From: Eukaryota sp. TZLM1-RC
Taxonomy: Eukaryota > Protista > Metamonada: BaSk clade
Direction: 5' to 3'
Length of the DNA: 64,000 nt
NCBI GenBank assembly: GCA_040285825.1
Contig: JAUPSS010000002.1
Coordinates: forward strand, 2,480,001 to 2,544,000
Shown: piece by piece, positions 1,300-64,000 of the stretch
Layout: the number at the start of each line of letters is the position of its first letter
How positions within the stretch are numbered: the first letter of the stretch is position 1
Notes under the pieces: generated by a model
The model's database searches: none
What the model was told of the DNA's origin: nothing
What the model saw: only the letters and a program-made list of their open reading frames with translations
Made by a program: the position numbers and the translations under genes

Positions 1300-3269
1300 G
1301 ATGATTTTGAAAACTTTGTTTATGGTGAAGGAGATTATAGATTATCGACCACCTTTGAACAACAAAAGTTGAACAAAACATTGAGTTATGTAGACCATTT
1401 GAGATATAGGCCTGAGTTTTTTCCACAATTTCCAACTGATGGCTTCAGTAGACCACCTCAGTATATGGCCCCAGTAATGTTTGCCAATTTTGAGAATAAT
1501 TTGAAACTAAATTATGAAAAACATATTAATCGATTTATTAATGTTTACTTTGACAAACCAGATGTGGAAAATGTGTTAGCAGAAATGCACAACTGGGTGG
1601 GTACTCAACGCCATTATCTACCATTATGTCACTATATAGATTTAGGCTTCGTCAATTCAAAAACTTGTTTTTAGTTGATGACAGAGATTGCTTGAGTTTT
1701 TTGTTTCATCATCCTGAAAATATTTCAGACCTTCTGAATGATGAATTTTTCGATTTATGTGAACAACATGATATAAGAAATAATGAACTTAGAGACATAT
1801 TTGAAGGTCTTATTGAGCCTTTTACTTGTCAAATTGAGAATTTGGTCACTGACGAGAATTTAGTTGATAACATATTTCCAGTGGATATACATTTTCTTGC
1901 AGACGCTGTTGAAAAAGATCCTCAAATATTCCTAACACCAGCAATTACAATTGTCCATTATATCTCCAGTAGAGAGAAAAAACCTTATCATATTTCTCCT
2001 GTTTCAACCACTGTAGGCCCTGGATATTTTCCCATTGATACAAGAACACTATGGAGAATTGTTAAACAAACATTGATGGATGATTTATCATCTACACAGA
2101 CGCTGAAAATGTCCAATACATTAGCCCAAATTACGAAATTCAAACCGCCTCAGCAATTTGACTTTTGGTCTAATATTCTCGATTTAAACCAACCAATATT
2201 CAAACAGAAGAGCTATAAATTCAACAACATTATCCAGACAGATGGATTTAATATTGCAGTAGAATTTGTCCGTCGGGATTTACAAGGTCAGAAATGTAAG
2301 CCAGACAACAAGGCCAGTATTTCTGATTTATATATTCATGATGTTGATGTTGATGTTGATGTTGATGCTTTTCAAGACAAACGAATTGTTGTTTGTGATC
2401 CTGGAAAACGTGATTTATTATACTTTGGGAGTAAAAAGACTGATGAAGAACTAGCCGTGGTTCCTCAGAATGACACTGAACAGCAAAGAAATAGTTGGGT
2501 GATGAATCAAGACAAGAAGTACAAATGGTTGAGAATGACTCAAATGTCCTGGTCTTTGAAAAGTAGGATGGATGGAAAACAGAAACGATGGGCGACAAAG
2601 TATACTGAGGTAGGTTACGACAGGAACTAATTGATAGAGTCTAATGAAATGACAATTGAAGATGCACACCCAATTATCCGCATTTGCTGCAAATTCAGCA
2701 ACTTTTAGAGAGTTCTCGAACTTTGTGGTTACCAAACTTCGGCAAGTTTTTTGGACAATTGACTTTTACAGTCTTGACTTGTGGAGCATTCATAAAATGC
2801 AAGCTTTTATTCACAAGCAAAAGACTGAAAGTTGGTTGTTGGAAAATCTTGTGCAGCAGTTTGACAATCCAAAAAACACTTTACTAATGGGTGATTGTGG
2901 TAAAAAAGGTTTTAAGAATTTGAAACATCAGAGACCTACTCGAGGCATTGGATGGAGTCAATTTCTGAAATGAAATGGATTTGAAGTATTGATGATTAAT
3001 GAAGCTTTCACTTCAGCAAAATGTCCTGTTTGTTTTGAAAAGGTTGCTACGTTTTTGAGAGTAAAAAACCCAGATTCTATAGAAGAGAAAAGACTCCTTT
3101 TACTACATGTCATGGTTTATTAGCTGGTAATAGTGAGAGTTGCAAACTCAGTAACAAAGGCTCAACAAAGCTCTTCAATAGAAATAAGCTGGCTTGTCTG
3201 AATATGTTTGCAATTGCTGAAGCAAGGATGAGTGGTAATGAAAGGCCTCAGTATCTGTGTAGTAGATAG
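1300..3269 (+). pseudogene. Fanzor (TnpB-like) family 1, frameshifted and 5'-truncated
   Basis: YMA..MFANFENN, IQTDG and RuvC-I VVCDPGKRDLL; MGD..HQRPTRGIG; RuvC-II INEAFTSAKCPVC; CHGLL; FNRNKLACLN; C-terminal ERPQYLCSR* at 3269. Several stops and frameshifts. Confidence 0.85.
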
Positions 3270-3320
3270 TTTTTGTAATTATTCCACACGAAAATTGATC
3301 ATGTATTTATGTCAATTTCC
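3270..3320 (+). ncRNA. Putative omega-RNA / right-end segment of Fanzor family 1
   Basis: Conserved with 19951-20003 (taattattccRcacgaaa...gatcRtgtatttatg..aatttcc), contains a hairpin, then diverges. Confidence 0.5.
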
Positions 3321-19605: not shown

Positions 19606-19674
19606 ACACTTGGTGATGAAGTTTACTCATTCAAAGTATTCTGTCCATACATCATCACCATTCCATGGACTTGG

Positions 19675-20003
19675 ATTTGAAGTATTGATGATTAAGGAAG
19701 CTTTCACTTCAGCAAAGTATCCTGTTTGTTTTAAAAAGGTTGCTACGTTTTTGAGAGTGCTATAGAAGAGAAAAGACTCTAGTTACTGCATGTCATGGTT
19801 TACTAGCTTGTAACAGTGAGAGTTGCAAACTCAGTAACAAAGGCTCAACAAAGCTCTTCACTGGAAATAAGCTGGCTTGTTTGAATTTGTTTGTGATTGC
19901 TGAACCCAGAATGAGTGGTAATGAAAGGCCTCAGTATCTGTGTAATAGATAGTTATGGTAATTATTCCGCACGAAATTAGATCGTGTATTTATGGGAATT
20001 TCC
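19675..20003 (+). pseudogene. 3' fragment of Fanzor family 1 with its conserved downstream segment
   Basis: Aligns to 2977-3320 (GFEVLMIKEAFTSAK...CHGLLAC...GNKLACLN...ERPQYLC). Confidence 0.85.
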
Positions 20004-37294: not shown

Positions 37295-38422
37295 AATATA
37301 AATCACCAATTAAAACCAATAATTAAAGCAGGTTGTTTTGCTGATGATGCCAGACATTCTTTGCTGTCTGGCTTACTGCTTCCCAGTAACTCTATTATTT
37401 GTTATAGGTTGCCAATTGTGTTCCACTCTGAAGGAAGATCAGTTGCACCTAATAACAGATGCTTTTTGTTGAGAAGATGGCTTTCCATGACTTTAAATTA
37501 GCAATTATTGTATTTTGCTTAATGTTTTGTACAAATTAAAAAGGATTATAGATATTGTTTTTAATATGGAATTTTTGTACACTTTAGCGAATGAGTATTT
37601 TTGATTATAAGAAATATTTGTATTCATTTTCTTCTTATTGATTTGTCGATCTTATCACTTATTAAGAAATATTCAATTAATATTGGTTGACTTTAATATT
37701 TAACTCATTTTGTCAATAAGTGAGAATTTTAAAAGAAGTGTTGTTTTTGCTGAAACCTGATCTTCAATTTTTCAATTTGAATGCTTTGCAACATTACATA
37801 ATACTCATATATACTAATAGGGCAAGCTTTTCTGTCTATTGTTTCTATTATTTATCATTCGTGGTACCGTGTGAGGTGTTCAACAATTCTAGCGTCTCAA
37901 ATTTTCGATTATCTGGTTCTAGCAATCGGACATATTAAGTTGTTCTTCCTTTGAAAAAAATTGAGTAGAAGCTCATCAAGTACAGATTTCTTTCAATAGT
38001 GTAAGAGTTTTGTTTTAATTAATGAAATTCGGTTCTAGAATGGTGACATTAAGTGATTGGGGAAAGTATTTATTCCATTGTTGTATGTCATTGTTTTGAA
38101 ATTTCTTTAATGTAATTGAAATTGAGCTCTCGCTAGTCATTAATAAATCTATTCAGTATGCAAAACTTTCAAAAAACTCAAATTGAGCGTTTCTATATCC
38201 ACCAATAGAAGCACAAGAAGCAAAAAGTGGTGCTTTAGTCCACAAAATGTTTTTTTAGAAAGCTCTTTTGGTAAAATAATCAAATGCAATGCTTTTCGAA
38301 CTGAGCAAGGGTGCTTCAATTGATTTATTCCAAAAAAAATTGAAGTATTGCGAATGAGATAACAAAACAGTCTATGCAAAAATGTACAAACTCAGAACAA
38401 CCATGCTTTAGAAAATGATGTT

Positions 38423-38587
38423 GTGAGTAAAAAACGCCCCTTCACGAGCACTGACCCAGCAATCTGTACGAAAACTGAACAGATCAGTATTTTGCCAGTA
38501 CTCAGGGCGTAACCACTGGAGGGAATCGAACCCTCGACTTGTAACAGTTGATGCCAAAGTCCTTCCGTTTAAGCTACAGACAGTGGT
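38423..38587 (-). ncRNA. tRNA-derived Pol III unit: tRNA-like head, long hairpin and T6 tract (SINE-like or unknown ncRNA)
   Basis: ACCACTG/CAGTGGT acceptor stem, A box TAGCTTAAACGG and B box GGTTCGATTCC in a GAGGG/CCCTC T arm, with a non-canonical anticodon arm. Followed by stems ACGCCC/GGGCGT, GAGTACTG/CAGTGCTC and ATCTGT/ACAGAT, then TTTTTT. Confidence 0.65.
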
Positions 38588-39365
38588 GTTATGTATTCTT
38601 CAAACTTGATTTGATCTTCACCTATTGTTCATTTATAAAAATCATTTTGTTATTTCACATTGTAAATGTTTTTGCAATCCCATCATAGACGAGTATCACG
38701 ACAACGACGTTCCTTTCTTACTGTGTTTATAGTGTTGGGTTAGACATGTATCACGAATTATTTCTCATTACTATGTCTACTCATCAAGTTAATGAGGAAA
38801 TTCTGAAATATCAAGTGTACTTTTAACAATTTTGAGCTCCATTATTGGGTTTGGTTTTATTTGAAGAACAGAGTTAGGAGTAGGAAGAAGAAGTGACATT
38901 GTAGGAGAGAACAGTCTACTTCCCAACCCAATAACTAGTTCAGTCATTGTTGATTCAAGTTCTAAGATAGATCATGTTATGTTTTTTCCTACAACTTTGA
39001 ACCTTGTGTGAAAATTGGAAGGGAAATTCAAGGAAGGGAATAGAACTCTTAAGTGAAATTTCAATTATAATATGTAATTCTATGACGTTTGGATAGTTGC
39101 TCGACTCAGCGGGTCGTAAGTCAATTGAGTACGGAGCTTTTACTTCATAAAAGAAGTTTGTCGCGGGGACTGTTTGTCTAAATGAAGCAAGCAGAAATAA
39201 ACACAATTAGTTTGTATTTGAAAAATCAATAAAAATTCAATCATTTTGTTTGAGCACAAAATACAATACCAAACCAAAAAAAAGCAAACTAACTACTTGA
39301 TAAAGACAAACCTATAATACAAAAGCAACTCAAAACAACAAAGAAAACCAAAAAAAAACCAAATA

Positions 39366-40007
39366 CTATTGGGGATATTCTACACCATTAATCTTGGCTA
39401 AATACCTTTCGTGTTCCCTTATCTCTTTCTTTAACTGTACTTGGGCTACCTTATCTTGAAGTTGATTAGTCCTGTGTAATATGTCGGCATAAACATTATC
39501 AAAAGTTAGTTCAAAGGCCCTTGACTTGTTTTCTTTAATAAAATTCCGTTGACATTTCTTTCTAGCTTCTAATTTAGCTCTATTTCGTTCATTAGAAAAT
39601 TCCTCCACATATTGCAAAAAAGAAGCTTGGGCTGCTGCATCTTCTTTCAGTGTAGCAATGTGTCGAGATATTTGCTGGGTTAGGTTTTTTGACTGGTTTT
39701 CTGTGTTAGCTCCAGGAAGGGAATTGAGAATCGAATAAGAATCTTTACTTGATAAATTAGGATGGTTTGAATCTTTGGAAGGGTAGAGGCGTCGCAGAAG
39801 TGAGGACTGACGAACTAGTTTAGGTTGTTGCTTCTGTTTTGGTGAAGATGGTTGTGGTTCAACTGGAACATGTTTGGATCGTTGTTTTGGTTTGGCTTGT
39901 ACAGGTTGAGACTTGAATTGATTGGATGTTGTAAGTCTTTTCTGAAAAGTGCTGAGGAGATGCTCAGCTTGAGATAGAACAGGTTCTTCCGGTTCTGGTG
40001 AGGTCAT
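39366..40007 (-). CDS. Hypothetical protein with a low-complexity N-terminus and coiled-coil C-terminus
   Basis: 213-aa ATG-initiated ORF. Confidence 0.65.
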   Translation of the reverse strand: MTSPEPEEPVLSQAEHLLSTFQKRLTTSNQFKSQPVQAKPKQRSKHVPVEPQPSSPKQKQQPKLVRQSSLLRRLYPSKDSNHPNLSSKDSYSILNSLPGANTENQSKNLTQQISRHIATLKEDAAAQASFLQYVEEFSNERNRAKLEARKKCQRNFIKENKSRAFELTFDNVYADILHRTNQLQDKVAQVQLKKEIREHERYLAKINGVEYPQ

Positions 40008-40049
40008 TGTTACAGATATTGACTACAATAATGGGAGGAGTATCCTTTC

Positions 40050-40215
40050 TGTGGTTTTCATTTGAAATGCATACTTTCGTCAAGCATCATTCAAACTTAA
40101 TCCAAGAACTTTCATTCTTGGTGAGATCGTCCACAGATGTTCTAGAATCCTCGAATAATTGGCCACCAATCTCAGTGAGCCCATTTCTCCTCTAAAACAA
40201 TACGTAGCTTTGAAG
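40050..40215 (-). ncRNA. Putative omega-RNA scaffold of Fanzor family 2
   Basis: 166 nt after the Fanzor stop, with 7 substitutions against 63822-63987. Several hairpins including a GAAA tetraloop; sharp divergence after GAAAACCACA. Confidence 0.8.
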
Positions 40216-42045
40216 CTAGTTTCTTTGTGGTCTCTGGAACGCTTCTGGTCTTGTTCCATAGTAGTGTTCACTAATTGCAATTTCTAGCTGATTTAGTGAT
40301 GCATAAATGTCTCTAGACCATACTTGATTACATTCCGGACAACTGAAATAGGCGTTGTGAACTTTAACTTCACCATCAACTTCTCTATAGATCTTTTGGT
40401 GTAGCATCTTGCAGCAGTTCACCTTTGCAGATGTCATATATTCATCTCCGATCTTCACATTAGCAAATGAACATTGTAACAACTTGAGAAATGCCTTACG
40501 TGGAGTTTTCACTTTTTGACGTGATGTACCACCACCTCCATTGCCAAACCACACCTTTACTTCTCGACCGTTTGCAAATTTTTTCACTTTGTTGATAATG
40601 GAGCTGAATCTTTTCTGTTTTCTTATAAAGAAGTCAAATGTGTTTCTCCTCAATGCTTTTCGAGCACTCAGATATAATTGCTGCTTTAGCAATGATCGTC
40701 TTACGTTATTACCTTCATAGTCCTTATAGTCACCGATAGTTGATATTTCAAGCAGATAATGGTTCAATTTCTGCACGTCATAAACATCTATTGATGAGTG
40801 GGTCAGTGAAGCGGAGTGATTGATTTTTCGTTGCTTTGGTGCCAAGAAGATATTGGATACGGTCGGCCCTGAACATGTTCCAATACTGGAACCACATAGA
40901 TTTGAGTGGTTAGGGTCGATGGCCCAGAACACCATTTCCGTTTGGTCATCAGGTGCCTGCCACTCAGTAGCTTTTGGTTTCTGCCGAGGTCTTGGCCGTT
41001 CAACCTTGGCTTGCAAGGTATGTTTTCTATTCCGAGTGGTTTCGTAGTAGTCAAGTTCCCCTCTGGATCTCTTATTATTCAAGGCTTCTCCGGACAATCT
41101 CACTCGTGTTGCTTTGGGGTGCGGTCTGAAAGTCATACGGACACTATCACCATTAGAAGACATGGTGTAGTCATTAGCTTTTGTTTTAAAAAATAAATAA
41201 GGGTTTTTCAAAATTGTTTGTGATGTGTTTTTGGAGATAAAATGGTTGAGAACCCATGTGGAAAAGGGGACAAAAGCAGGCTTCAAACTAGCGATGGGAG
41301 TGAGTCTATGTCGTCTAAAGGTATATGGAAAGGCTTGCTCCAGGTAGTTTTGGATTGTTAAGCCGCAACGAAAGATGTAGGTACTCTTCTCTTGATTAAG
41401 AGTCACTCTTCGAGAAGAAAGAAGAGTGTTGTACCTTTGAGGATCACCAACCAAAAAGTTAAACAGAGTAAGAGCCATGGTATGGTGAGTGTTGAACCAA
41501 GAAAGAAGAGGTTCACGAAAGTTCGTGCTGTTGTGAAGAACAGAACCAGCATAAGTGGCTGGTGCAGGGCAGTTATAACCTACCGCATACGAGCGGAAGA
41601 AGTTAAGCTTCCACGACACAAGTCCATCAGCAAGAAGCTGCTGGTAGTTGCCTTGCAGCTGGCGGCACTTTGCATCCACTAGTTGTTGTAGAGGCCTACT
41701 AGTGGGTAGTGCATGATTACGACCTGTTCTTGACAAGAACAAGACAGCAAACGGCCATGATGTAGAGATTCGCTCGAGCTTCTCATACACATGGCCTTTG
41801 CCAGGTCTGTTAAATGGATGTCTGACTTTTGGCTTAGAGACCGCCACAAAGTCAAGACACTGGATCCAGAATTGATGCTGAGTCAGGAAATGACTGTGTT
41901 CAGGGAAGCGCACAGCAAAAACTCTGGCCAGCAAACTGCCGAGGTGAGCCATGGTGGTCACCTTGGTCAGCTGTCCATCAATGTAATCACACACTGGCCG
42001 CTCAAAGAACTGATAAAGGGAGCAGGCACGTGCCCATGACTGCAT
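40216..42045 (-). CDS. Fanzor RNA-guided endonuclease, family 2, apparently intact (~609 aa from ATG 42045; frame open to 42294)
   Basis: RuvC-I WAIDPNHSN; VWFGNG...PRK; RuvC-II GDEYMTS; CC...CPEC zinc finger; RuvC-III WSRDIYASLN; terminal RPEAF. Confidence 0.9.
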   Translation of the reverse strand: MQSWARACSLYQFFERPVCDYIDGQLTKVTTMAHLGSLLARVFAVRFPEHSHFLTQHQFWIQCLDFVAVSKPKVRHPFNRPGKGHVYEKLERISTSWPFAVLFLSRTGRNHALPTSRPLQQLVDAKCRQLQGNYQQLLADGLVSWKLNFFRSYAVGYNCPAPATYAGSVLHNSTNFREPLLSWFNTHHTMALTLFNFLVGDPQRYNTLLSSRRVTLNQEKSTYIFRCGLTIQNYLEQAFPYTFRRHRLTPIASLKPAFVPFSTWVLNHFISKNTSQTILKNPYLFFKTKANDYTMSSNGDSVRMTFRPHPKATRVRLSGEALNNKRSRGELDYYETTRNRKHTLQAKVERPRPRQKPKATEWQAPDDQTEMVFWAIDPNHSNLCGSSIGTCSGPTVSNIFLAPKQRKINHSASLTHSSIDVYDVQKLNHYLLEISTIGDYKDYEGNNVRRSLLKQQLYLSARKALRRNTFDFFIRKQKRFSSIINKVKKFANGREVKVWFGNGGGGTSRQKVKTPRKAFLKLLQCSFANVKIGDEYMTSAKVNCCKMLHQKIYREVDGEVKVHNAYFSCPECNQVWSRDIYASLNQLEIAISEHYYGTRPEAFQRPQRN

Positions 42046-43369
42046 AGTCCTTACTGAAAACGGAAGGTGCAGACAATCAAAAATGATTGATTTCTCAGTT
42101 TCAGTTACTTTTAAAATTTGGTGTATTTTCAACTCCTTACATCCACAAAACAATGAAACATGCACAAACTGATAAATAGACACATTTATAATAGATACTG
42201 GACATGCTTTAAGCATTTTCTTTCCTAAAAATAGTAAACTGATGCGAAATTTGACGAAATTGTTGTTAGTCAAAGCAGTTGTTCGTTTAATCAAGGGTGT
42301 TTGTAGATTCGAAAGATTGTAGATTGTCCTTTATTCAATACAAACACGTTACCAAGGGAAGTCACAACACCCGTTTCTTTCTTCCCATTTCTTTCCTTCT
42401 TTGACGAAGAACCTTTTGCTCCTCGTTCAACTATATCTGAATTCGCCATGGATCTTTGTGGAACTGTTGGCTTTTCTATTATAGCGATTATAGGTTTCGT
42501 TTAGTGCGCTCACACATTGACTATAAAACATATAAAATAGACTAACAAAAGACAGTCTGTAGAGGCATTACTGGCTATTCTTGAGTCTAAACTCGAGTCT
42601 ATTGCAGATCGTCCATCCCAAGCTGTGCCAACAACTTCTGCTGTGTCACCCCTTTCAGCTGCACTTCTTGTCTTGAAACTAGACATCTGAATACTTATTA
42701 TTACCTTGTCTCTCTACTTCGCCCTCTTCACCCTCTTTCTACTCATCTTTCTTCCATAGAAGATGTTCCTCCTGTCTTCACTTGTATTACCATCAGTTAT
42801 CAATATACACCCTTACACCTCTGGTATCGTTTGTTCACTCTCTACGAATCAACTCACTCCAATCTTAATCTACTCCAGTCTAACCTACTGCTAATATACA
42901 TGAACTTCTAAAGTCTAATGAGCAGAAGATTTTTGAACTTAATGAACTCCAATTGAAACTGAATTGAAGACACTTGTAATGTTAGTCAACATGGCTTCCT
43001 TGCAGAGATTGATTTTGACCAATTTCATATTAATGTAGTGTGATACGATGATAAGTCTGAAGACATCCACGCTGCTATGAGTGAAACATATCCCCTTGAA
43101 TTCAGGTTCGGACTCTTGAGAAAGCAGATTTTCTGGTTAATAACCTATTTCTGAACCTTCACTGTTTTGAATGTGCGTGGTTGATAATAATTTGTGTAAA
43201 TACTAGTGAATAATATTTATATAATAATATATATAATAATATAAAATATTAGTGACGGTAGTATTATAGGTGATTTAAATCGTAACTAAAAGTGCTAATA
43301 CTTACCACATAACTAATAGTTCCCAAATAAAATATTATCGATTCATGTTTTATTATAGTGTTCGTTCAA

Positions 43370-43640
43370 GTGTTGGTAAAAAGAATAGTGTTGGTGAAAG
43401 AAGTGGTGTGGTGAAAGAGGATTTTATAATTAAGGTGAAGATTGAGGAAGATTTACCTGTTCAATAAAATAGAATCTAATACTCCTCTTTTAAAATTAAC
43501 ACAGTAATGTTGTTAATTCTAGGATCTGACTGGTACATACCATAATGCTGAAATTTGAAATGTAAGACTCATATAAGACAAAAGGTAGTTAATTGAGTTG
43601 GTGAAAGAAACAGTTGGTGAAAGAAAAAATTTCACCAATA
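43370..43640. repeat. Dispersed short repeats TGGT(G/A)AAA(G/A)A, possibly transposon subterminal repeats
   Basis: About five direct copies plus one partial inverted copy (tttcaccaa). Confidence 0.4.
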
Positions 43641-43689
43641 TGCAACCAAAGTGAGAACCACAGTTGAATTCTTAACAAATCTCCTTTTT

Positions 43690-44180
43690 TTAAGAAAAGA
43701 GATTTTTGATAAAAGAAGGGTAGATTTAGTAGCTCCAGGGCTCGCTGGTGTTCTCAATGTTATGGATGTTGTCTCAGTCGATGTCTGCAAAAATTCTGCT
43801 GCTGATTTGGTGTATTCTGCTGAATTGCCACTATCCAACGCCGAAAAAACGAAAAAAAAAATATGAAGAACCATTGGCGCATTTAGGTAGATTCGATTAT
43901 GGGAAATATCAGTTTGTGCCGTTTGCTATTTCTCTTTTTGGCAATATTGGGCATTCAGGATTGCACTGTTTGGAAAATTTTAAGTCAGCATTGCCAAACA
44001 GATCTTGTAAAAATTGAATTCTTCTTTCTGGTTAAATACAATTGTTTTTTGCATTTTTAAGTCTATTCCAACAATGATTTCTAAAGCTCTTTTAGCTATT
44101 GGTGTAGAATGAACGAAATGCTGTGAGTAGGTTTAGTCATAGTGATGTTTGTTTGGAGGATATAGAATATTAGATAGAAT
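43690..44180 (+). mobile_element. Non-LTR RLE 3' fragment, family D
   Basis: KRRVDL..MDVVSVDVC..AEK.K..Y; matches 60870-61340. Confidence 0.85.
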
Positions 44181-44393
44181 ATTCGATCAATAAAAATATG
44201 GTTAATAAAGAAGTTTTGAAGAGTATTGACTCTTAATCCTCGATTTACTGTTTTTTCGCCAGCAATAAGTGTTTCAATCAAATTGAGAATAATAATAAAA
44301 TATAAAATAACAATAATAATTATAATAAAAATATAATTAATATAATTTTTTTGATTAAAAAAATAAGTGTTTATAAATAAGAGTAAAGGAAAC

Positions 44394-45195: not shown

Positions 45196-46469
45196 TTTGG
45201 AATAAAAACTGAGGTTTTCACTTCTATCACATAATAAAAAAAATTTAGACCTCTCATAAACTGTCCCTATTATATCTTTTCCTTTCGACTTTGATGCCAC
45301 ATTCAACAGTACTTCTACTCCTGCCCAGTCTTTCATATTTTTGGATCGTGAATCTGGTGAAGATTCTACACCTGCTTCATCTCGTTCATTGAACGATCAG
45401 TCTTTTCCTGACACCGTCTTTTGCAAAAGTTCTGTACTGCAGATCTTTGGCCGATAAGGCCATGTAATTTACACTGACCAATATAAAAATCTACTGTTAG
45501 TGAAATTTTTTCTTTGTAAAACTACAACGCTAGTTCGTCTTCTATATCTAAACGGAACGCTTCAATCTCCTCAATCTCCTGAAATATACTTTCTCTGTTC
45601 TCAAACTGCTTTTGTTTATCTTCAACGAGGTTCTCTGCCATGTTTCCTTCTACATTTTCAAAATACTCTACAACTTTGATCCAGCTCTGCTGCTTTTCCA
45701 TTTAAACAAGAGTCAATGTTTTAGACTCTACTTTTTTTGATTTCAGTGTGAAGTAGTGCAATATAAAACGTCGATTTGACTTGTGGAAAAGAGAGAGAAT
45801 ACCAATTTCAATTTTTACAAACAAAAAAAATTGAGAGGTAGATGCTTCATCAAGCTTCAAAAACACCTACATTCAATTTTCAAGTGTTTGGAATAAAATT
45901 ATGAATTAAACAAATTGCCCGATTTTGAGACTTCGGCCATAATAGTGGTGGTCATTTTTTTACATTGGCCAAAGATTTGCTGTGTCAAACATTTGCAACA
46001 GACCGTAAATTTATATCTCTATTGGTAATTTTGATTAGAATTATCCAAGTTGAGGACCATTGTACGTCGTGCAGCCTGAAGCAAGCTACAATATTTTTCA
46101 TTTTTCATGCACATCTTATGCCAAGACTAATAAGGAAGTGCTTGTTTTTATTTGTTTGGTTCTCCAAATCATGAAGTTGCAGAATAAACAAAACATTCTA
46201 TGATTTCTGTTAAGTTGTTTTTTCTAATTTTGGCATTTAATCAACAATAGCAGATAAAATTGCGTTTTTTTCAAAAACCATTGTATAACACTGAAAATAG
46301 CCCAAACATTTGCCTGACAGTAACTGTATTTTAAAGTTGTTCCTTAGTGGTTGATCGTTTGTTCTCTGAAATAGAATTCAATAAACGTGTACGCTTCGAT
46401 TTATCCTCAAAATGCTGAAGGCGGAATTTATGGTGAAACATCGTTCAGCAGATAAAGAAAAACTTTTCA

Positions 46470-55713: not shown

Positions 55714-56407
55714 CTAGACTAATTGTCCAAAGTACAACATTTCATAATAAAAATATTCACCTGATGCATCAAAAATTATTCCCACAACAGATTCATACCA
55801 CTGTTCCCACCACCCAGCTAAGGAAGATGGCATGTGGAAAACGCCATGATCATAAATATCGAGAAAAGCTTTTGGGTTTGGACATTCCAGCTCTTTGGCT
55901 GTGGCAATCAAAATCTTTTTCTCTCGAAGTAGGAAACAAAGAAGCATGCATGGCTTCAGAATTGATTGCAAGATTTTTGCAAATATCTTTTATTATACGG
56001 GAATGGCAACTGTGTGTCTCTCCATTGCAGTAGACACTGGATACAGAAATTATCTTCAGGTAAGGCTGAAACATAGTTACCAAAACATTGGACTGAAAGT
56101 TAAGATCATAAGGAGATTCAATAGGTCTTTGCTTTTTATTAGTGAACCAGTCTTTCATTGAGAAAACATCAGTGGTAGTATGCCTAAAATTTTGATCTGT
56201 AAGAGCAAATGCCAAATCAGGATAAGAGTTGATAAACTCTCTGGTAAATAGGGAAGTGTAACGCATTATTTTATCAGCTGCGTTCAAATGGCTCCGAATC
56301 CACTTGATGTTGGATCGTGGAAAGAATTGTGAGATACTAGCAGAGAGAGTAATAGCAGTAGTGGGAGTATTTGGTGTAACCATATCCAGATCATCTTGAT
56401 TTGACAT
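55714..56407 (-). pseudogene. N-terminal half of a diverged family 2 Fanzor
   Basis: SISQFFPR..I..HL...M..TSLFTREF...YP....LT...F aligns with SLYQFFER..I...L...M...SLLARVF...FP....LT...F of the 42045 protein, and CPNP aligns with CPAP. Frameshifted and truncated. Confidence 0.65.
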
Positions 56408-59960: not shown

Positions 59961-60869
59961 CAAACTTTGTTTTCATCGTGATTTTCGAAAATTCTTGATC
60001 AGAATTTTTTTGTCCAAAAATGAAGAGAGAAAAGGATGAGGAGGAGAGGTGGAAAGGACGTCTTGAGCATCTTGTTGTCTATCGTTCTTTCTTTTGACTC
60101 CATTAGAATCAGAAACTGATTCAGGCATCAACAAGAAAGAATAGAAGCAATGATCGCGGTTCAGCCAGGTTGTAAATTAAACGGTTATATGTAGAGGAAG
60201 GAAAAAAATCAACTTTTCTGGAATTCCAAGACTCAGAATTCCAGAAACAATGGAAGAACGGAAAAGAAACGTCGAATAGGTAATCAGTTTTCCTGAGCTT
60301 TATTATATTTCAGAGGCACTTTACGTTTTAATCAGCTGAAAATGCGTTATCTACATTGATTAAACTTATGAAATTTGTGCCAATTGTGTTTCAGAAGAAC
60401 TAATCCCAGTTTGTGTTTAATTCTATCTTTTATCATAAATCTGCTTAAGTTCAACAAGATTTCAAGTCTAACATACAATTCTAATGTTCTTAAAGTTTAT
60501 TTTTATAACAGCTGGTTTTCATCTATGTTTAAAGACACAGTATGAAAAATAAAGATTCCGATCTGGTCTTTCTACATCAATTTTTTTGGAAGTAAGAAAA
60601 ATGTTTGATTTCTAGTTCTTAACTGAAAATTATATCTTTGCATTATCATTTAGATTGATTAAAAGGTCTTTGCCCTTGAATGTCACCACTGGTCATTTGA
60701 ATTGTTTTGATAGGGGTAAGAATTCGATCTTCCAGATTTACTAAGTATTTCAATTTGGAATTTGAGTCCACATTCATTATATACTATCAGTTGTATTTTT
60801 CTACCATTAATTATCAATTGTGGATTTGATTCTTTTTTTATGTACTCTAATTTTATTGAAAAAAATTTC

Positions 60870-62200
60870 TATCTAGTATTCAATATCCTCCAAACAAACA
60901 TCACTATGACCAAACCTACTCACAGCATTTCGTTCATATTCTACACCAATAGCTAAAAGAGCTTTAAAAATCATTATTGGAATAGACTTGAAAATGCAAA
61001 AAACAATTCTATTTAACCAGAAAGTGGAATTCACTTTTTACAAGATCTATTCCGTAAAACTTTCTTGAAATTTTCAAAAGAGTGTAACCCTGAAGGTCCA
61101 GTATTGCCAAAAAGAGAAATTGCAAACGGTACAAACTGATATTTCACATGACTCAATTTAATTGTGCCAATGGTTTTTTATATTCTTTTACTTTCCTTTT
61201 TTCGGCGTTAGATAGCGGAGAATCAGCGGAATACACCAAACGAGCAGCACAATTTTTGCAGACATCTACTGAGACAACATCCACAACATTGAGAACACCA
61301 TCGATCCCTAAAGCTTCTAATTCTGCCCTTCTTTTACCAAAGGAATCATCAGTTTGATCTGGAGATAGCTTACGAACTAAAAGTTTAATAAATGCCTCTA
61401 TATTGAAACTTTTACACATGGCATATAATTGATCACGAACTAAGTCATGAACAATTGAGCGATAATTCATAAAAAAATTTGCAGTTTAAAATATGGGAAT
61501 GCGTAATAACACTCTTGCAGCGACAAATTATATCATTTGGTAAAGAACAAAGCCTTAGAAAACATCTCATTCTCATTGCAGTGGTCCATTGGTGATCATT
61601 AAGTAGAAGGCCATAAATGTTGGGAATTTGGGAGATTAGGCAACTTGAGCAACTGTCTTCAAGATCAATCAAAAAGTTTGCAAAAACGGGATTTTTTTGT
61701 TTAGCCAAGCTAAGACGTACAATTTAATCCAAGTTTTCTAAAACTTTTAAGATTTTTTTTCTGCAATTTTGCAAAAGTCAGTAATAAGGAGAGCAAGCTT
61801 TTTGAAGGAAGTTCCACAATATCAGAGGGAAAACATTTAGACCAAATATTTGGTGAAAGAGTTTCAATTTCCTGTTGCAAAAAAATAAAATATGAGCTGT
61901 CACAGTTTTCAATGAAATCAATTTTTTCTGGAAAGCGATTCACAAATTGAAATATAAAATTCTTACCACCTCCATTAAAGGCAGCTTTACAAAGGTAGCC
62001 TGATTTATGAAAATCAACATCACCAAAATTTGTACCACAAAAAATGTGGCTTCGTAACTGAGATGCATCAATTTCCAATAATTTTGCTAAAAAATTGGTT
62101 CTTTGTTCATTCAAATTTCGACAAAATTCCAAAAAAAATGATGGTGATGTTGATTTCAAAATATGAGTAAACGTTCCAGACATTTCACATTTGATTCTTG
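60870..62200 (-). mobile_element. Non-LTR family D fragment
   Basis: CRCK..HILNC, HDLVRD and DVVSVDVC; matches 43690-44180. Confidence 0.85.
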
Positions 62201-62564: not shown

Positions 62565-62864
62565 ACGTCGGATGTGTACCGCGCACTCTATGACGTCTCG
62601 TTCCGACCTCGCTGACCAATTCCTCCTATTGGCTTTCAGAAAGGAACCGACAACTGCTGTTATTCTGACATCAGAAGCTTTCGCGCATTGTAAATGGCGA
62701 ACAGCTTTTGTCAAATACTCACTGATGGCCCTGTCTCCTGGAAGCTGAACTTCTTGCGAACAATGGCTACCTTCTTTGAGTGCCTTTCTCCAAAGAAATA
62801 AGCTTCACTAGTGGTGAACACGACTGCAGCCACTATTCCTGACTCTGTGCGCGCATGGTATGAT
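62565..62864 (+). pseudogene. Remnant of another diverged family 2 Fanzor (middle region)
   Basis: QILTDGPVSWKLNFLR...EC.SP aligns with QLLADGLVSWKLNFFR...NCPAP of the intact copy. Confidence 0.75.
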
Positions 62865-62960
62865 CAGGGCTTGGAAATACTGTATTGCAATATATTGGTA
62901 TTGGTATTCAGCCCATTAAACAATATTGATAAGTACCAATATATTGACAATATTCTTTTC
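62865..62960. mobile_element. Probable hAT/MITE terminus
   Basis: Begins CAGGGCTTGG, followed by clustered CAATA/TATTG repeats; interrupts the Fanzor remnant. Confidence 0.45.
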
Positions 62961-63280
62961 TACTTTCGAAGTCTGTTTTTAGGAAGAAACTATTAAATCT
63001 TTATAAACTACAACTAATGCTAATTATCAACATTTGTATCTTCCTCTGACCAGTTTTTATCACACAGTTTACGAATAGTTGCAACATCCCACAATTCTAG
63101 ATTGTATCACAACCATAGCTGAGCTTCAAGACGATTGTTGGACAGCGAATTTCAAGTCAGTCCGATGGTTAATTTGACTCAAGAAAACAACCGTTCTACC
63201 TCAACAGACGTTGCGGAAATCCAAGTCAAATCCCTGTACTTTCTATTGAGAGCTCGTCGCTGTTGTGACAAGTCACGAGC

Positions 63281-63821
63281 TCTGCTTGAAATAAGAATAA
63301 ACGGTGACTATAACGACTATGAAGGTAATAACGTAAGACGATCATTGCTAAAGCAGCAATTATATCTGAGTGCTCGAAAAGCATTGAGGAGAAACACATT
63401 TGACTTCTTTATAAGAAAACAGAAAAGATTCAGCTCCATTATCAACAAAGTGAAAAAATTTGCAAACGGTCGAGAAGTAAAGGTGTGGTTTGGCAATGGA
63501 GGTGGTGGTACATCACGTCAAAAAGTGAAAACTCCACGTAAGGCATTTCTCAAGTTGTTACAATGTTCATTTGCTAATGTGAAGATCGGAGATGAATATA
63601 TGACATCTGCAAAGGTGAACTGCTGCAAGATGCTACACCAAAAGATCTATAGAGAAGTTGATGGTGAATTTAAAGTTCACAACGCCCATTTCAGTTGTCT
63701 GGAATGTAATCAAGTTTGGTCTAGAGACATTTCTGCATCACAAAATCAGCTAGAAATTGCAATTAGTGAGTACTACTATGGAACAAGACCAGAAGCGTTC
63801 AAGAGACCACAAAGAAAATAG
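63281..63821 (+). pseudogene. C-terminal part of family 2 Fanzor, lacking RuvC-I
   Basis: Near-identical to 40216-40757. Confidence 0.9.
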
Positions 63822-63987
63822 CTTCAAAGCTACGTATTGTTCTAGAGGAGAAATGGGCTCACTAAGATTGGTGGCCAATTATTCGAGGATTCTAGAACGT
63901 CTGTGGACGATCTCACCAAGGATGAAAGTTCTTGGAATAAGTTTGAATGATGCTTAACGAAAGTATCCATTTCAAATGAAAACCACA
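63822..63987 (+). ncRNA. Second copy of the family 2 omega-RNA scaffold
   Basis: Matches 40050-40215 and diverges after GAAAACCACA. Confidence 0.8.
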
Positions 63988-64000
63988 AATTGTTGAACAT

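What the first reader, a model, noticed from the sequence alone, without database searches (positions are those of the whole stretch)
40030..42045. Apparently intact Fanzor nuclease with a definable omega-RNA and guide boundary
Seen: an uninterrupted ~609-aa ORF with all three RuvC acids (DPN, DEYMTS, RD) and a zinc finger, followed by 166 non-coding nt also present at 63822-63987. Both copies end at GAAAACCACA, then read GAAAGGATACTCCTCC versus AATTGTTGAACAT. Known: TnpB/Fanzor omega-RNAs are a conserved right-end scaffold plus a guide taken from flanking DNA. Inference: this is a candidate active eukaryotic RNA-guided endonuclease. No transposase is visible next to it, so its carrier element is unknown.
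Basis: partly seen in the sequence, partly recalled or inferred. Interest (0 to 1): 0.9.

Follow-up and report, generated by a model that had tools for sequence, protein, structure and literature searches.

The report
Divergent Fanzor1 nuclease element in Skoliomonas
This is a real, uninterrupted gene for a Fanzor1-type RNA-guided DNA cutter, carried on a roughly 3.5-kb mobile element in the free-living flagellate Skoliomonas litria; its tail looks like a guide-RNA scaffold, but no RNA or cutting has been shown, and this copy has an odd change beside its active site.

Summary
The 609-aa ORF (40216-42045, minus strand) is intact. The 167-nt tail recurs at 63822-63988 inside a 707-nt, 97% identical partial copy.

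The genome is Skoliomonas litria TZLM1-RC (Metamonada). Pfam and plain PDB searches nearly miss the protein. Profile chaining (hhalign E 7e-35, then SpuFz1 E 2e-68) and an AlphaFold model (pLDDT 85.5; Z 18-20 to SpuFz1, PpFz1 and GtFz1 over 460-509 residues) place it in Fanzor1. D377, E535 and D579 are invariant.

Five sister subfamilies in three Skoliomonas species end in a related motif. That motif can pair with an upstream arm, with some covariation. This gives moderate, not decisive, support for an omega-RNA scaffold.

Caveats:
- No RNA data were available.
- The TAM and the left end are unresolved.
- No transposase or terminal inverted repeats were found.
- This copy alone carries S581Y in the RuvC-III motif.
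- Sibling copies include a nonsense mutant and one that lacks the catalytic Asp.

In 8 of 11 loci the right end lies 5-80 nt upstream of a same-strand host start codon. This scan had already noted that docking pattern on other DNA of this genome.

The parts
40216..42045 (-). Fanzor1-family coding sequence, 609 aa plus stop, uninterrupted
   Evidence: ORF. (profile homology to SpuFz1, PpFz1 and GtFz1). (model pLDDT 85.5; Z 18-20 to Fz1 structures).
40915..40917 (-). Codon of D377, the RuvC-I catalytic Asp, in AIDPN
   Evidence: Invariant in 20 of 20 relatives. Aligned to IDPN/IDPG of SpuFz1. Deleted in sibling copy L004.
40441..40443 (-). Codon of E535, the RuvC-II catalytic Glu, in GDEYMTS just before the TNB zinc ribbon
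   Evidence: Invariant. Aligned to LDEYKTS of SpuFz1. The position matches the description 'E on the loop between the fifth beta strand and TNB' in PMC11423790.
40303..40311 (-). Codons D579-I580-Y581. D579 is the RuvC-III catalytic Asp. Y581 is a substitution private to this copy.
   Evidence: D579 is invariant. Column 581 is N (12), S (7) or A (1) in relatives, and S in the four sibling copies. D579 aligns with the SpuFz1 NRD motif that holds D606.
40330..40416 (-). TNB zinc-ribbon region: C544, C545, H549 ... C569, C572
   Evidence: Pfam Cas12f1-like_TNB, 21.4 bits, below the 26.3 cut-off. C569 and C572 are invariant. The first Cys of the usual first CxxC (column 542) is V or T in skoliomonad proteins, which instead conserve C544, C545 and H549.
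40049..40215 (-). 167-nt non-coding right end; candidate omega-RNA scaffold
   Evidence: Shared by six copies of this family. Its MFE fold beats shuffles, z -2.1 to -3.1. The consensus fold is given.
40139..40198 (-). Predicted long hairpin SL-A (positions 18-77 after the stop)
   Evidence: An analogous first hairpin follows a shared A(C/T)GTATT-like motif in sister subfamilies, by reading the sequences.
40131..40136 (-). 5' arm (CUGUGG) of the predicted closing helix
40049..40054 (-). 3' arm (CCACAG) of the closing helix; these are the last bases of the element
   Evidence: 84% of cells pair, against 24-49% when the partner is slid. Both sides change in subfamily L006/L007: CUGAGAA with UUCUCAG.
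40060..40121 (-). Two predicted inner hairpins, SL-B (40102-40121) and SL-C (40060-40096)
   Evidence: Copy-to-copy changes in them are in loops or switch between Watson-Crick and wobble pairs.
40029..40048 (-). Flank that would serve as the guide if the scaffold ends at 40049. It lies in the leader of the downstream host gene.
   Evidence: Copies share no sequence here beyond the first 1-4 nt. That it is a guide is inferred, not shown.
39366..40007 (-). Host ORF (213 aa) whose ATG lies 41 nt downstream of the element's right end, on the same strand
42046..43152 (-). 5' non-coding part of the element, shared at about 97% by all five full-length copies; no ORF of 60 aa or more
43153..43530 (-). 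Mosaic left part. 43309-43530 is shared only with copy L001, and 43152-43256 only with L002. The true left end is unresolved.
63281..63988 (+). 5'-truncated copy of the same family: the last 178 codons plus the 167-nt tail
62574..62981 (+). Degenerate N-terminal remnant of a different subfamily, just upstream of the truncated copy
   Evidence: tblastn, 34-45% identity to P0006, P0007, P0009 and P0010.

Best explanation
Window 40049 to about 43530 (minus strand) is one copy of a young, multi-copy mobile element of Skoliomonas litria. The element has no transposase. Its only gene encodes a 609-aa member of a skoliomonad-specific, very divergent branch of the Fanzor1 RNA-guided endonucleases.

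Shown here:
- The protein has the Fanzor1 fold and full-length profile homology.
- The D/E/D RuvC triad is conserved.
- The element has a sharp right end, shared by six copies of this family.
- Five sister subfamilies in three species share the terminal motif.

Inferred:
- The 167 nt after the stop codon, perhaps with a little of the ORF end, are transcribed as the omega-RNA scaffold. The predicted fold is one long hairpin followed by a domain closed by pairing of the last six bases with an upstream arm.
- The transcript runs into the flank, and those flank bases act as the guide.
- The nuclease cuts matching DNA lacking the element, next to a TAM that is still unknown. This would help the element persist or home, as described for TnpB and Fanzor.

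Whether this particular copy works is doubtful. Its ORF is whole, but it alone has S581Y two residues after the catalytic D579. Copies L002 and L003 keep the family residue and are better candidates.
For: - Host and copy number: all close relatives are annotated 'hypothetical protein' in three Skoliomonas genomes. Its 90% cluster has 24 members, four of them 607-609 aa.
- Homology: the skoliomonad-only profile against a profile of distant metagenomic relatives gives hhalign probability 99.9%, E 7e-35, over 527 columns. That second profile hits SpuFz1 8GKH at E 2e-68, PpFz1 at 2e-57 and GtFz1 at 1e-52. The joint profile hits SpuFz1 at 5e-64 over positions 9-589.
- Structure: the AF2 model has pLDDT 85.5 and pTM 0.79. 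The top seven Foldseek hits are all Fz1, E 8e-15 to 7e-10. VIA-align gives Z 18-20 over 460-509 residues, against Z 14 or less for Cas12, TnpB and Fz2.
- Catalytic residues: D377, E535, D579, C569, C572, R578 and N585 are invariant in 21 sequences.
- Right end: the five full-length copies share about 3.1 kb at 97% and all stop at ...AACCACAG.
- Sister subfamilies at 35-45% protein identity end in TGAAA(A/T)NC..(C/A)AG, 72-135 nt after their stop codons.
- Closing helix: it appears in the MFE fold of 5 of 6 subfamilies, is recovered by RNAalifold, and is 84% paired against 24-49% in slid controls, with three pairs changed on both sides.
- Scaffold length: 72-167 nt fits the 75-150 nt reported for Fz1 (PMC11423790).
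- Selection: dN/dS among copies is 0.34-0.77.
Against: - No RNA evidence: no RNA run was listed, and Rfam has no match.
- A crude test of terminal pairing against shuffles and offsets was not significant.
- The covariation rests mainly on one subfamily (L006/L007) plus a register-shifted case (L010).
- Within-family substitutions are 12 of 13 non-disruptive. Because most are transitions, that is only about p 0.06.
- The conserved terminus could be a transposase or recombinase site, or a promoter piece, rather than an RNA scaffold.
- The first zinc knuckle is non-canonical.
- The window copy has S581Y. Siblings L001 (stop at codon 450) and L004 (loss of D377-P378) show the family is decaying.
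- No TAM, TIR or consistent TSD was found.
Confidence: 0.7

Rival explanations
1. The family is a Fanzor1 element as above, but this copy is a dead or crippled relic. S581Y beside the catalytic Asp, together with seven other private substitutions, has impaired it. Any activity in the cell would come from sibling copies such as L002 (P0019) or L003 (P0022).
For: Column 581 is N, S or A in all 20 relatives and S in all four siblings; Y occurs only here. The copy has eight private amino-acid changes. Other copies are visibly broken. dN/dS of 0.5-0.8 against siblings suggests near-neutral drift after insertion.
Against: The ORF is complete and all three catalytic acids and the second CxxC are present. 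Fz1 tolerates changes in this helix: D606N in SpuFz1 even raises activity (PMC11423790). The effect of Tyr at this position was not tested.
Confidence: 0.35
2. The conserved 3' terminus and its hairpins are mainly a DNA-level signal rather than an RNA scaffold. They could be a site for an unlinked recombinase or transposase, or a core-promoter and leader piece that keeps the docked host gene expressed. The guide boundary would then be only a transposon end.
For: The right end lies 5-80 nt upstream of a same-strand annotated ATG in 8 of 11 loci. A CAG stands at both the left junction and the right end in 4 of 6 copies, and 3-bp direct repeats flank both L006 and L007. The terminal motif is conserved more strongly than the inner hairpins.
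Against: In known TnpB and Fanzor systems the transposon end and the scaffold end coincide, and Fz1 reRNAs absorb TIR and TSD bases (PMC10711439). The two roles therefore do not exclude each other. G-U pairs and wobble-to-Watson-Crick switches fit a strand-specific RNA.
Confidence: 0.2
3. The element mimics an intron. All three left-end variants can be parsed as starting with GT, and every right end finishes in AG, preceded by an A/C-rich tract like host 3' splice sites. The element could then be spliced out of leaders it lands in.
For: Left ends read GTCAGA, GTTGTG or GTGTTT if the junction is placed one or two bases in. Predicted host introns end ...ACATCAG...AACATCAG or ...CCACAAAG, similar to ...AACCACAG. 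The element shows a same-strand bias relative to the downstream gene.
Against: The host introns I recovered are 22-139 nt, against a 2.7-3.5 kb element. The putative 5' sites do not resemble the GTA(T/A)G-type starts of those introns. Left junctions are ambiguous by 1-3 nt. A guide lying downstream of a 3' splice site would be separated from its scaffold by splicing.
Confidence: 0.06

Closest known systems
SpuFz1, Spizellomyces punctatus Fanzor1 (PDB 8GKH, 9CEU-9CEZ)
   Same: Same overall WED-REC-RuvC-TNB fold, aligned over model residues 1-606 (Z 18-20). Full-length profile match. Same placement of the triad: Asp in I-D-P, Glu in D-E-Y-x-T-S just before the TNB, and Asp in the R-D helix. Similar size, about 600-640 aa. 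Non-coding RNA is encoded at the 3' end, and the 72-167 nt scaffold range brackets the 90 nt of SpuFz1.
   Different: Only about 15% identity. Not detectable by phmmer against the PDB and below Pfam's threshold. The first CxxC of the TNB is replaced by CC-x3-H. Asn replaces Gly after I-D-P. RNA, TAM and cleavage are all untested here. The host is a metamonad, a group that appears in none of the four Fanzor survey papers I searched.
GtFz1 and PpFz1 (PDB 9CER, 9CF0-9CF3)
   Same: Z 19-20 over 460-503 residues. Profile E values 1e-52 and 2e-57.
   Different: No FRI insertion like that of PpFz1. It keeps Asp, where GtFz1 has Asn, at the third catalytic position.
Fanzor1-only non-autonomous elements (SfAV Fanzor1 element; CRe-1/2/3 Helitron2 elements of Chlamydomonas)
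   Same: The element encodes only the Fanzor, is multi-copy, and has a well-kept 3' end but a variable 5' side (PMC10711439; PMC3627910).
   Different: No terminal inverted repeats were found. Termini are not Helitron-like: no 5'-TC...CTRR-3'. TSDs are inconsistent. The right end sits next to host start codons.
IS607 and IS200/IS605 TnpB with right-end omega-RNA (reRNA)
   Same: RuvC/TNB core (Z about 12-13). The same logic of a scaffold ending at the transposon right end with the guide taken from the flank. A short identical motif (CAG) at the left junction and the right end recalls the IS607 crossover at matching dinucleotides.
   Different: The host is eukaryotic, the REC lobe is much larger, no TnpA is present, and no pseudoknot was sought or shown.
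Fanzor2 (ApmFz2, PDB 9B0L)
   Same: Shares the RuvC/TNB core.
   Different: Clearly a weaker match: Z 11.1 over 314 residues, Foldseek E 3e-3. It is not the right subfamily.

Membership tests
Fanzor1 | TnpB-like bilobed fold (WED, helical REC, RuvC, TNB) matching solved Fz1 structures better than TnpB, Cas12 or Fz2 | tested here: met
   AF2 pLDDT 85.5. Foldseek top 7 are all Fz1. VIA Z 18-20 over 460-509 aa, against 14 or less for all other families.
Fanzor1 | Full-length sequence homology to characterised Fz1 proteins | tested here: met
   Met only through profiles. A1 versus A3: hhalign 99.9%, E 7e-35, 527 columns. A3 versus SpuFz1: E 2e-68. A2 versus SpuFz1: E 5e-64. Single-sequence phmmer found nothing.
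Fanzor1 | RuvC triad with the Glu in the loop between the last RuvC strand and the TNB (D ... DExxTS ... RD) | tested here: met
   D377, E535 and D579 are invariant in 21 sequences and aligned to the SpuFz1 motifs. The arrangement is as described in PMC11423790. The 3D geometry of the site was not measured.
Fanzor1 | Zinc-binding TNB with CxxC ... CxxC | tested here: inconclusive
   The second CxxC (C569, C572) is invariant. The first is replaced in all skoliomonad members by C544-C545 plus H549. Zinc binding was not tested.
Fanzor1 | Encoded in a eukaryotic genome as a multi-copy mobile element | tested here: met
   The genome is a eukaryote (GCA_040285825.1). The family has 24 cluster members. 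Five full-length copies at 97% lie in different gene neighbourhoods.
Fanzor1 | Omega-RNA (reRNA) transcribed from the 3' end of the gene and right end, with the guide continuing into the flank | tested here: inconclusive
   The boundary is sharp and shared. A conserved terminal motif and closing helix show some covariation, but the shuffle test was not significant. No RNA run was listed.
Fanzor1 | RNA-guided, TAM-dependent double-strand DNA cleavage | not testable with these tools
   This needs RNP purification and a TAM-library assay.
Fanzor1 carried by a TIR/TSD cut-and-paste transposon | Terminal inverted repeats and a target-site duplication of fixed length | tested here: not met
   Left and right termini are not inverted repeats. 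3-bp direct repeats flank L006 and L007, but nothing consistent flanks the window family, and none flanks the window copy.
Helitron2-borne Fanzor1 (CRe-1/2/3 type) | 5'-TC and 3'-CTRR termini with a subterminal hairpin, inserted after T-rich tetranucleotides | tested here: not met
   The right end is ...CACAG or ...CTCAG. Left ends differ between copies, and left flanks are not T-rich. The variable 5' side is the only shared trait.
Fanzor2 / IS607-type element | Fz2-type protein next to a serine-recombinase TnpA | tested here: not met
   Fz2 is a much weaker structural match. No recombinase gene is in the element or next to it in any of 11 loci.

The most novel reading that the evidence does not exclude
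This skoliomonad Fanzor1 clade belongs to elements that aim at, or survive only at, the few dozen bases in front of host start codons, in the same orientation as the gene. The omega-RNA guide would then be the host gene's own leader, and the element's conserved right end would become that gene's upstream control region. On this reading the element is a promoter-docking RNA-guided element with no TIRs and no linked transposase.
Probability: 0.3. Interest if true: 0.8.

Novelty: new variant of a known kind. Interest (0 to 1): 0.55.

Why it matters
The protein is an ordinary member of a known kind in mechanism. It extends Fanzor1 to Metamonada, through a clade so divergent that Pfam and plain sequence searches miss it. 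It comes with a compact nuclease (589-609 aa), short candidate scaffolds (as little as 72 nt after the stop in a sister subfamily), and several near-identical natural alleles that could be compared directly: intact, S581Y, loss of the catalytic Asp, and a nonsense mutant.

The more unusual points concern the element. It has no TIRs and no transposase. Its right-end motif is conserved across species. It repeatedly sits just upstream of host start codons. If that placement is targeted, it would be a new insertion rule for TnpB/Fanzor elements. It would also offer a natural case for asking what Fanzor nucleases do for their carriers in eukaryotes.

Tried and rejected
- Pfam on the single protein gave only a sub-threshold TNB hit.
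- phmmer against the PDB found nothing relevant. The skoliomonad-only profile against the PDB gave only a marginal LaTranC hit. Distant intermediates were needed.
- No RNA run was listed for the element, so read laying was not used and expression is untested.
- Rfam has no family in 38000-44000 apart from a weak tmRNA-like hit outside the element.
- A crude count of contiguous terminal pairing against shuffles and offsets did not separate the true boundary. I do not use it as support.
- The right end of the P0014 subfamily locus (L012) could not be recognised without a second copy.
- A motif search for the terminal 12-mer in the window was at chance level. The second hit, at 45209-45220, abuts no gene start.
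- Searches for TIRs, Helitron termini and a fixed TSD were negative or inconsistent.
- The short annotated family members mostly start at internal Met295. They are gene-model artefacts of decayed copies and say nothing about 5' truncation.
- Domestication as a host gene is rejected: the family has many decaying copies in different neighbourhoods.
Full report
**Observation.** The ORF finder gives 40216..42294 on the minus strand. From the first ATG, at 42045, it encodes 609 residues without interruption.
- AIDPN, with D377
- GDEYMTS, with E535
- SRDIYAS, with D579
- a zinc-ribbon-like NCCKMLH...CPEC

The stretch after the stop codon recurs near the end of the window. It is part of a 707-nt inverted repeat, 40050-40756 against 63281-63987, at 97%. 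That repeat also holds the last 178 codons. The second copy is therefore a 5'-truncated copy of the same element. Just upstream of it, at 62574-62981, lies a decayed N-terminal remnant of another subfamily.

**Organism and family size.** All close relatives are 'hypothetical proteins' of three isolates: TZLM1-RC, GEM-RC1 and TZLM3-RCL. Papers identify these as Skoliomonas, free-living anaerobic metamonads from soda lakes. The window lies on JAUPSS010000002.1 of GCA_040285825.1. The 90% cluster has 24 members, of which four are 607-609 aa.

**Is it a Fanzor?**
- Single-sequence tools nearly fail. Pfam gives only Cas12f1-like_TNB at 21.4 bits, below the 26.3 cut-off. phmmer against the PDB gives nothing relevant.
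- An exhaustive phmmer search found distant metagenomic proteins matching residues 430-608. All ten that I scanned carry the TNB domain.
- A profile of the skoliomonad proteins alone aligns with a profile of those distant proteins over 527 columns: hhalign probability 99.9%, E 7e-35.
- The distant profile hits SpuFz1 (8GKH) at E 2e-68, PpFz1 at 2e-57 and GtFz1 at 1e-52. The joint profile hits SpuFz1 at 5e-64 over nearly its whole length.
- An AlphaFold2 model built on the 21-sequence alignment has mean pLDDT 85.5 and pTM 0.79. Its seven best Foldseek matches are all Fanzor1 structures.
- VIA-align gives Z 18-20 over 460-509 residues spanning model residues 1-606. The next tier (Cas12 variants, TnpB, Fanzor2) is at Z 11-14.

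The protein is a Fanzor1, at about 15% identity to the solved ones.

**Active site and zinc ribbon.** D377, E535, D579, R578, N585, C569 and C572 are invariant across the 21 aligned proteins. The Glu sits in D-E-Y-x-T-S immediately before the TNB, which is the position described for the Fz catalytic Glu (PMC11423790). D579 aligns with the SpuFz1 N-R-D motif that holds D606. The first CxxC of the TNB is altered in the whole skoliomonad clade. Column 542 is V or T, and C544, C545 and H549 are conserved instead. Whether zinc is still bound is untested.

**State of this copy and its siblings.** I fetched four other copies, L001-L004; L005 is the window copy.
- L002 and L003 encode 609 aa with all motifs.
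- L001 has a CGA-to-TGA stop at codon 450.
- L004 keeps an open frame but has a 6-nt deletion that removes D377-P378.
- The window copy has eight private substitutions, including S581Y. That column is N, S or A in all 20 relatives.
- Pairwise dN/dS among copies is 0.34-0.77.

The ORF is intact, but this copy may not be the best candidate for activity.

**The element.** The five full-length copies share about 3.1 kb at 97% (L005 2894-5997, which is window 43152-40049). This comprises 1.1 kb of non-coding DNA upstream of the ATG, the ORF and the tail. No ORF of 60 aa or more lies in the upstream part.

Further left the copies are mosaic:
- The window copy shares 43309-43530 only with L001, and a 105-nt piece only with L002.
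- L003 and L004 have a third left variant.

I found no terminal inverted repeats, no Helitron-type termini, no transposase gene in or beside any of 11 loci, and no consistent TSD. Two hints remain. A CAG stands at the left junction as well as at the right end in 4 of 6 copies. Both copies of the sister subfamily (L006, L007) are flanked by 3-bp direct repeats, AAC and TAG. The carrier mechanism remains unknown.

**Right end and candidate omega-RNA.**
The 63-kb copy has A at the last base. After that the flanks are unrelated, except that all begin with A and pairs of copies share up to 4 nt. The scaffold-guide junction is therefore known to within about 0-5 nt.
- Five sister subfamilies at 35-45% protein identity, from all three species, end in the same kind of motif 72-135 nt after their stop codons. 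In the shortest, the first hairpin overlaps the stop codon.
- In the MFE fold of 5 of 6 subfamilies the last 5-7 bases pair with an arm 48-88 nt upstream, enclosing one or two hairpins. The arms covary: CUGUGG with CCACAG in four subfamilies, CUGAGAA with UUCUCAG in L006/L007, and a register-shifted CUUG-GGG with CCC-AAG in L010.
- On the alignment the helix is 84% paired, against 24-49% for slid partners, with three pairs changed on both sides. RNAalifold recovers it independently, though with a weak energy.
- Among the six copies of the window family, 12 of 13 variable positions in the tail are unpaired or keep the pair.

Against this, a crude terminal-pairing count does not beat shuffles or offsets. 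The within-family result is only about p 0.06 once the excess of transitions is allowed for. The covariation comes from few lineages.

The lengths and the multi-hairpin shape fit published Fz1 scaffolds of 75-150 nt. They also fit the published point that Fz1 scaffolds run to the very end of the transposon. I rate the omega-RNA reading as likely but unproven. No RNA run was listed, so nothing can be said about expression.

**Placement.**
- In 8 of 11 independent loci the right end lies 5-80 nt upstream of an annotated start codon on the same strand. It is 41 nt in the window, before the 213-aa ORF at 39366-40007. Five of those genes have Pfam domains.
- The upstream neighbour is on the opposite strand in 10 of 11 loci.
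- Seven of 11 loci sit in head-to-head intergenic regions. By my arithmetic that is about p 0.008 if a quarter of intergenic regions are of that type.
- In L007 and L008 an older, right-end-like terminus abuts an ATG a little further downstream.

After I had seen this, a look-up showed that this scan had already reported Fanzor right ends docked at start codons on other DNA of the same genome. My loci agree in direction but show a gap of 5-80 nt rather than exact abutment. If the guide is the flank, it is the leader of the host gene.

**Other readings.**
- The terminus may serve as a recombination site or promoter piece as well as, or instead of, an RNA scaffold.
- The ends can be parsed as GT...AG, and the right end resembles predicted host 3' splice sites. 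However, those host introns are 22-139 nt and the junctions are ambiguous, so I give an intron-mimic reading low odds.
- Domestication is excluded by the many decaying copies.

**Novelty.** Fanzor1 nucleases, their right-end RNAs and Fanzor-only non-autonomous elements are known. None of the four survey papers I searched mentions metamonads, though their supplementary tables were not read. The protein is a new, very divergent member. The variant aspects are the altered zinc knuckle, the carrier without TIRs or transposase but with a conserved right-end motif, and the placement next to gene starts.

Noticed in passing
window 1626-3320 (+) and 19672-20003 (+): A second, unrelated Fanzor1-like lineage, broken by frameshifts. 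The ORF at 1626-2630 aligns with the WED/RuvC-I part of the Fanzor1 profile (hhalign 94.6%, E 7e-8, with VVCDPGKRD). Downstream frames read INEAFTSAKCPVC and HGLL...FNRN, so the third catalytic position is Asn, as in GtFz1. Other first-stage notes on this window call nearby repeats 'CRE-like RLE'. Those readings may need rechecking against Fanzor.
   Followed up: partly
window 55741-56389 (-): An N-terminal fragment (about 30-37% identity) of the P0014/P0017 Fanzor subfamily known from TZLM3-RCL, with no C-terminal half beside it.
   Followed up: no
P0014 residues 1-100; L009 1-1733 (-): One sister-subfamily gene model carries an N-terminal Ulp1/C48-protease-like piece (Pfam E 0.027). A 991-aa C48-like gene sits upstream of another Fanzor copy.
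   Followed up: no
L006 3695-3717, L007 3770-3792, L008 3894-3923: Annotated Fanzor genes of sister subfamilies need one very short GT-AG intron (22 or 29 nt) to stay in frame. Host genes in the same loci have predicted introns of 31-139 nt ending ...ACATCAG or similar. The window's own ORF needs none.
   Followed up: partly
window 43705-44212 and 60834-61341: An inverted repeat of about 500 nt at 86% lies on the 5' side of both Fanzor copies in the window, 175 nt and about 1.2 kb from them (pairs I8, I15, I17). It is not part of the other genomic copies. Its nature is unknown.
   Followed up: no
L007 5030-5051; L008 4945-4963: Right flanks of two sister copies contain an older right-end-like terminus (...AACCACACATCAG and ...AACCACAAACCCAAG) directly abutting an ATG. 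This suggests successive insertions stacked in front of the same gene start.
   Followed up: no
window 40957-41095 (protein residues 317-363): A basic loop that is partly low-confidence (pLDDT below 50 at residues 345-363; contains KRSR and RPRPRQKPK) lies between the WED strands and RuvC-I. It could be a nuclear-localisation signal. Not tested.
   Followed up: no
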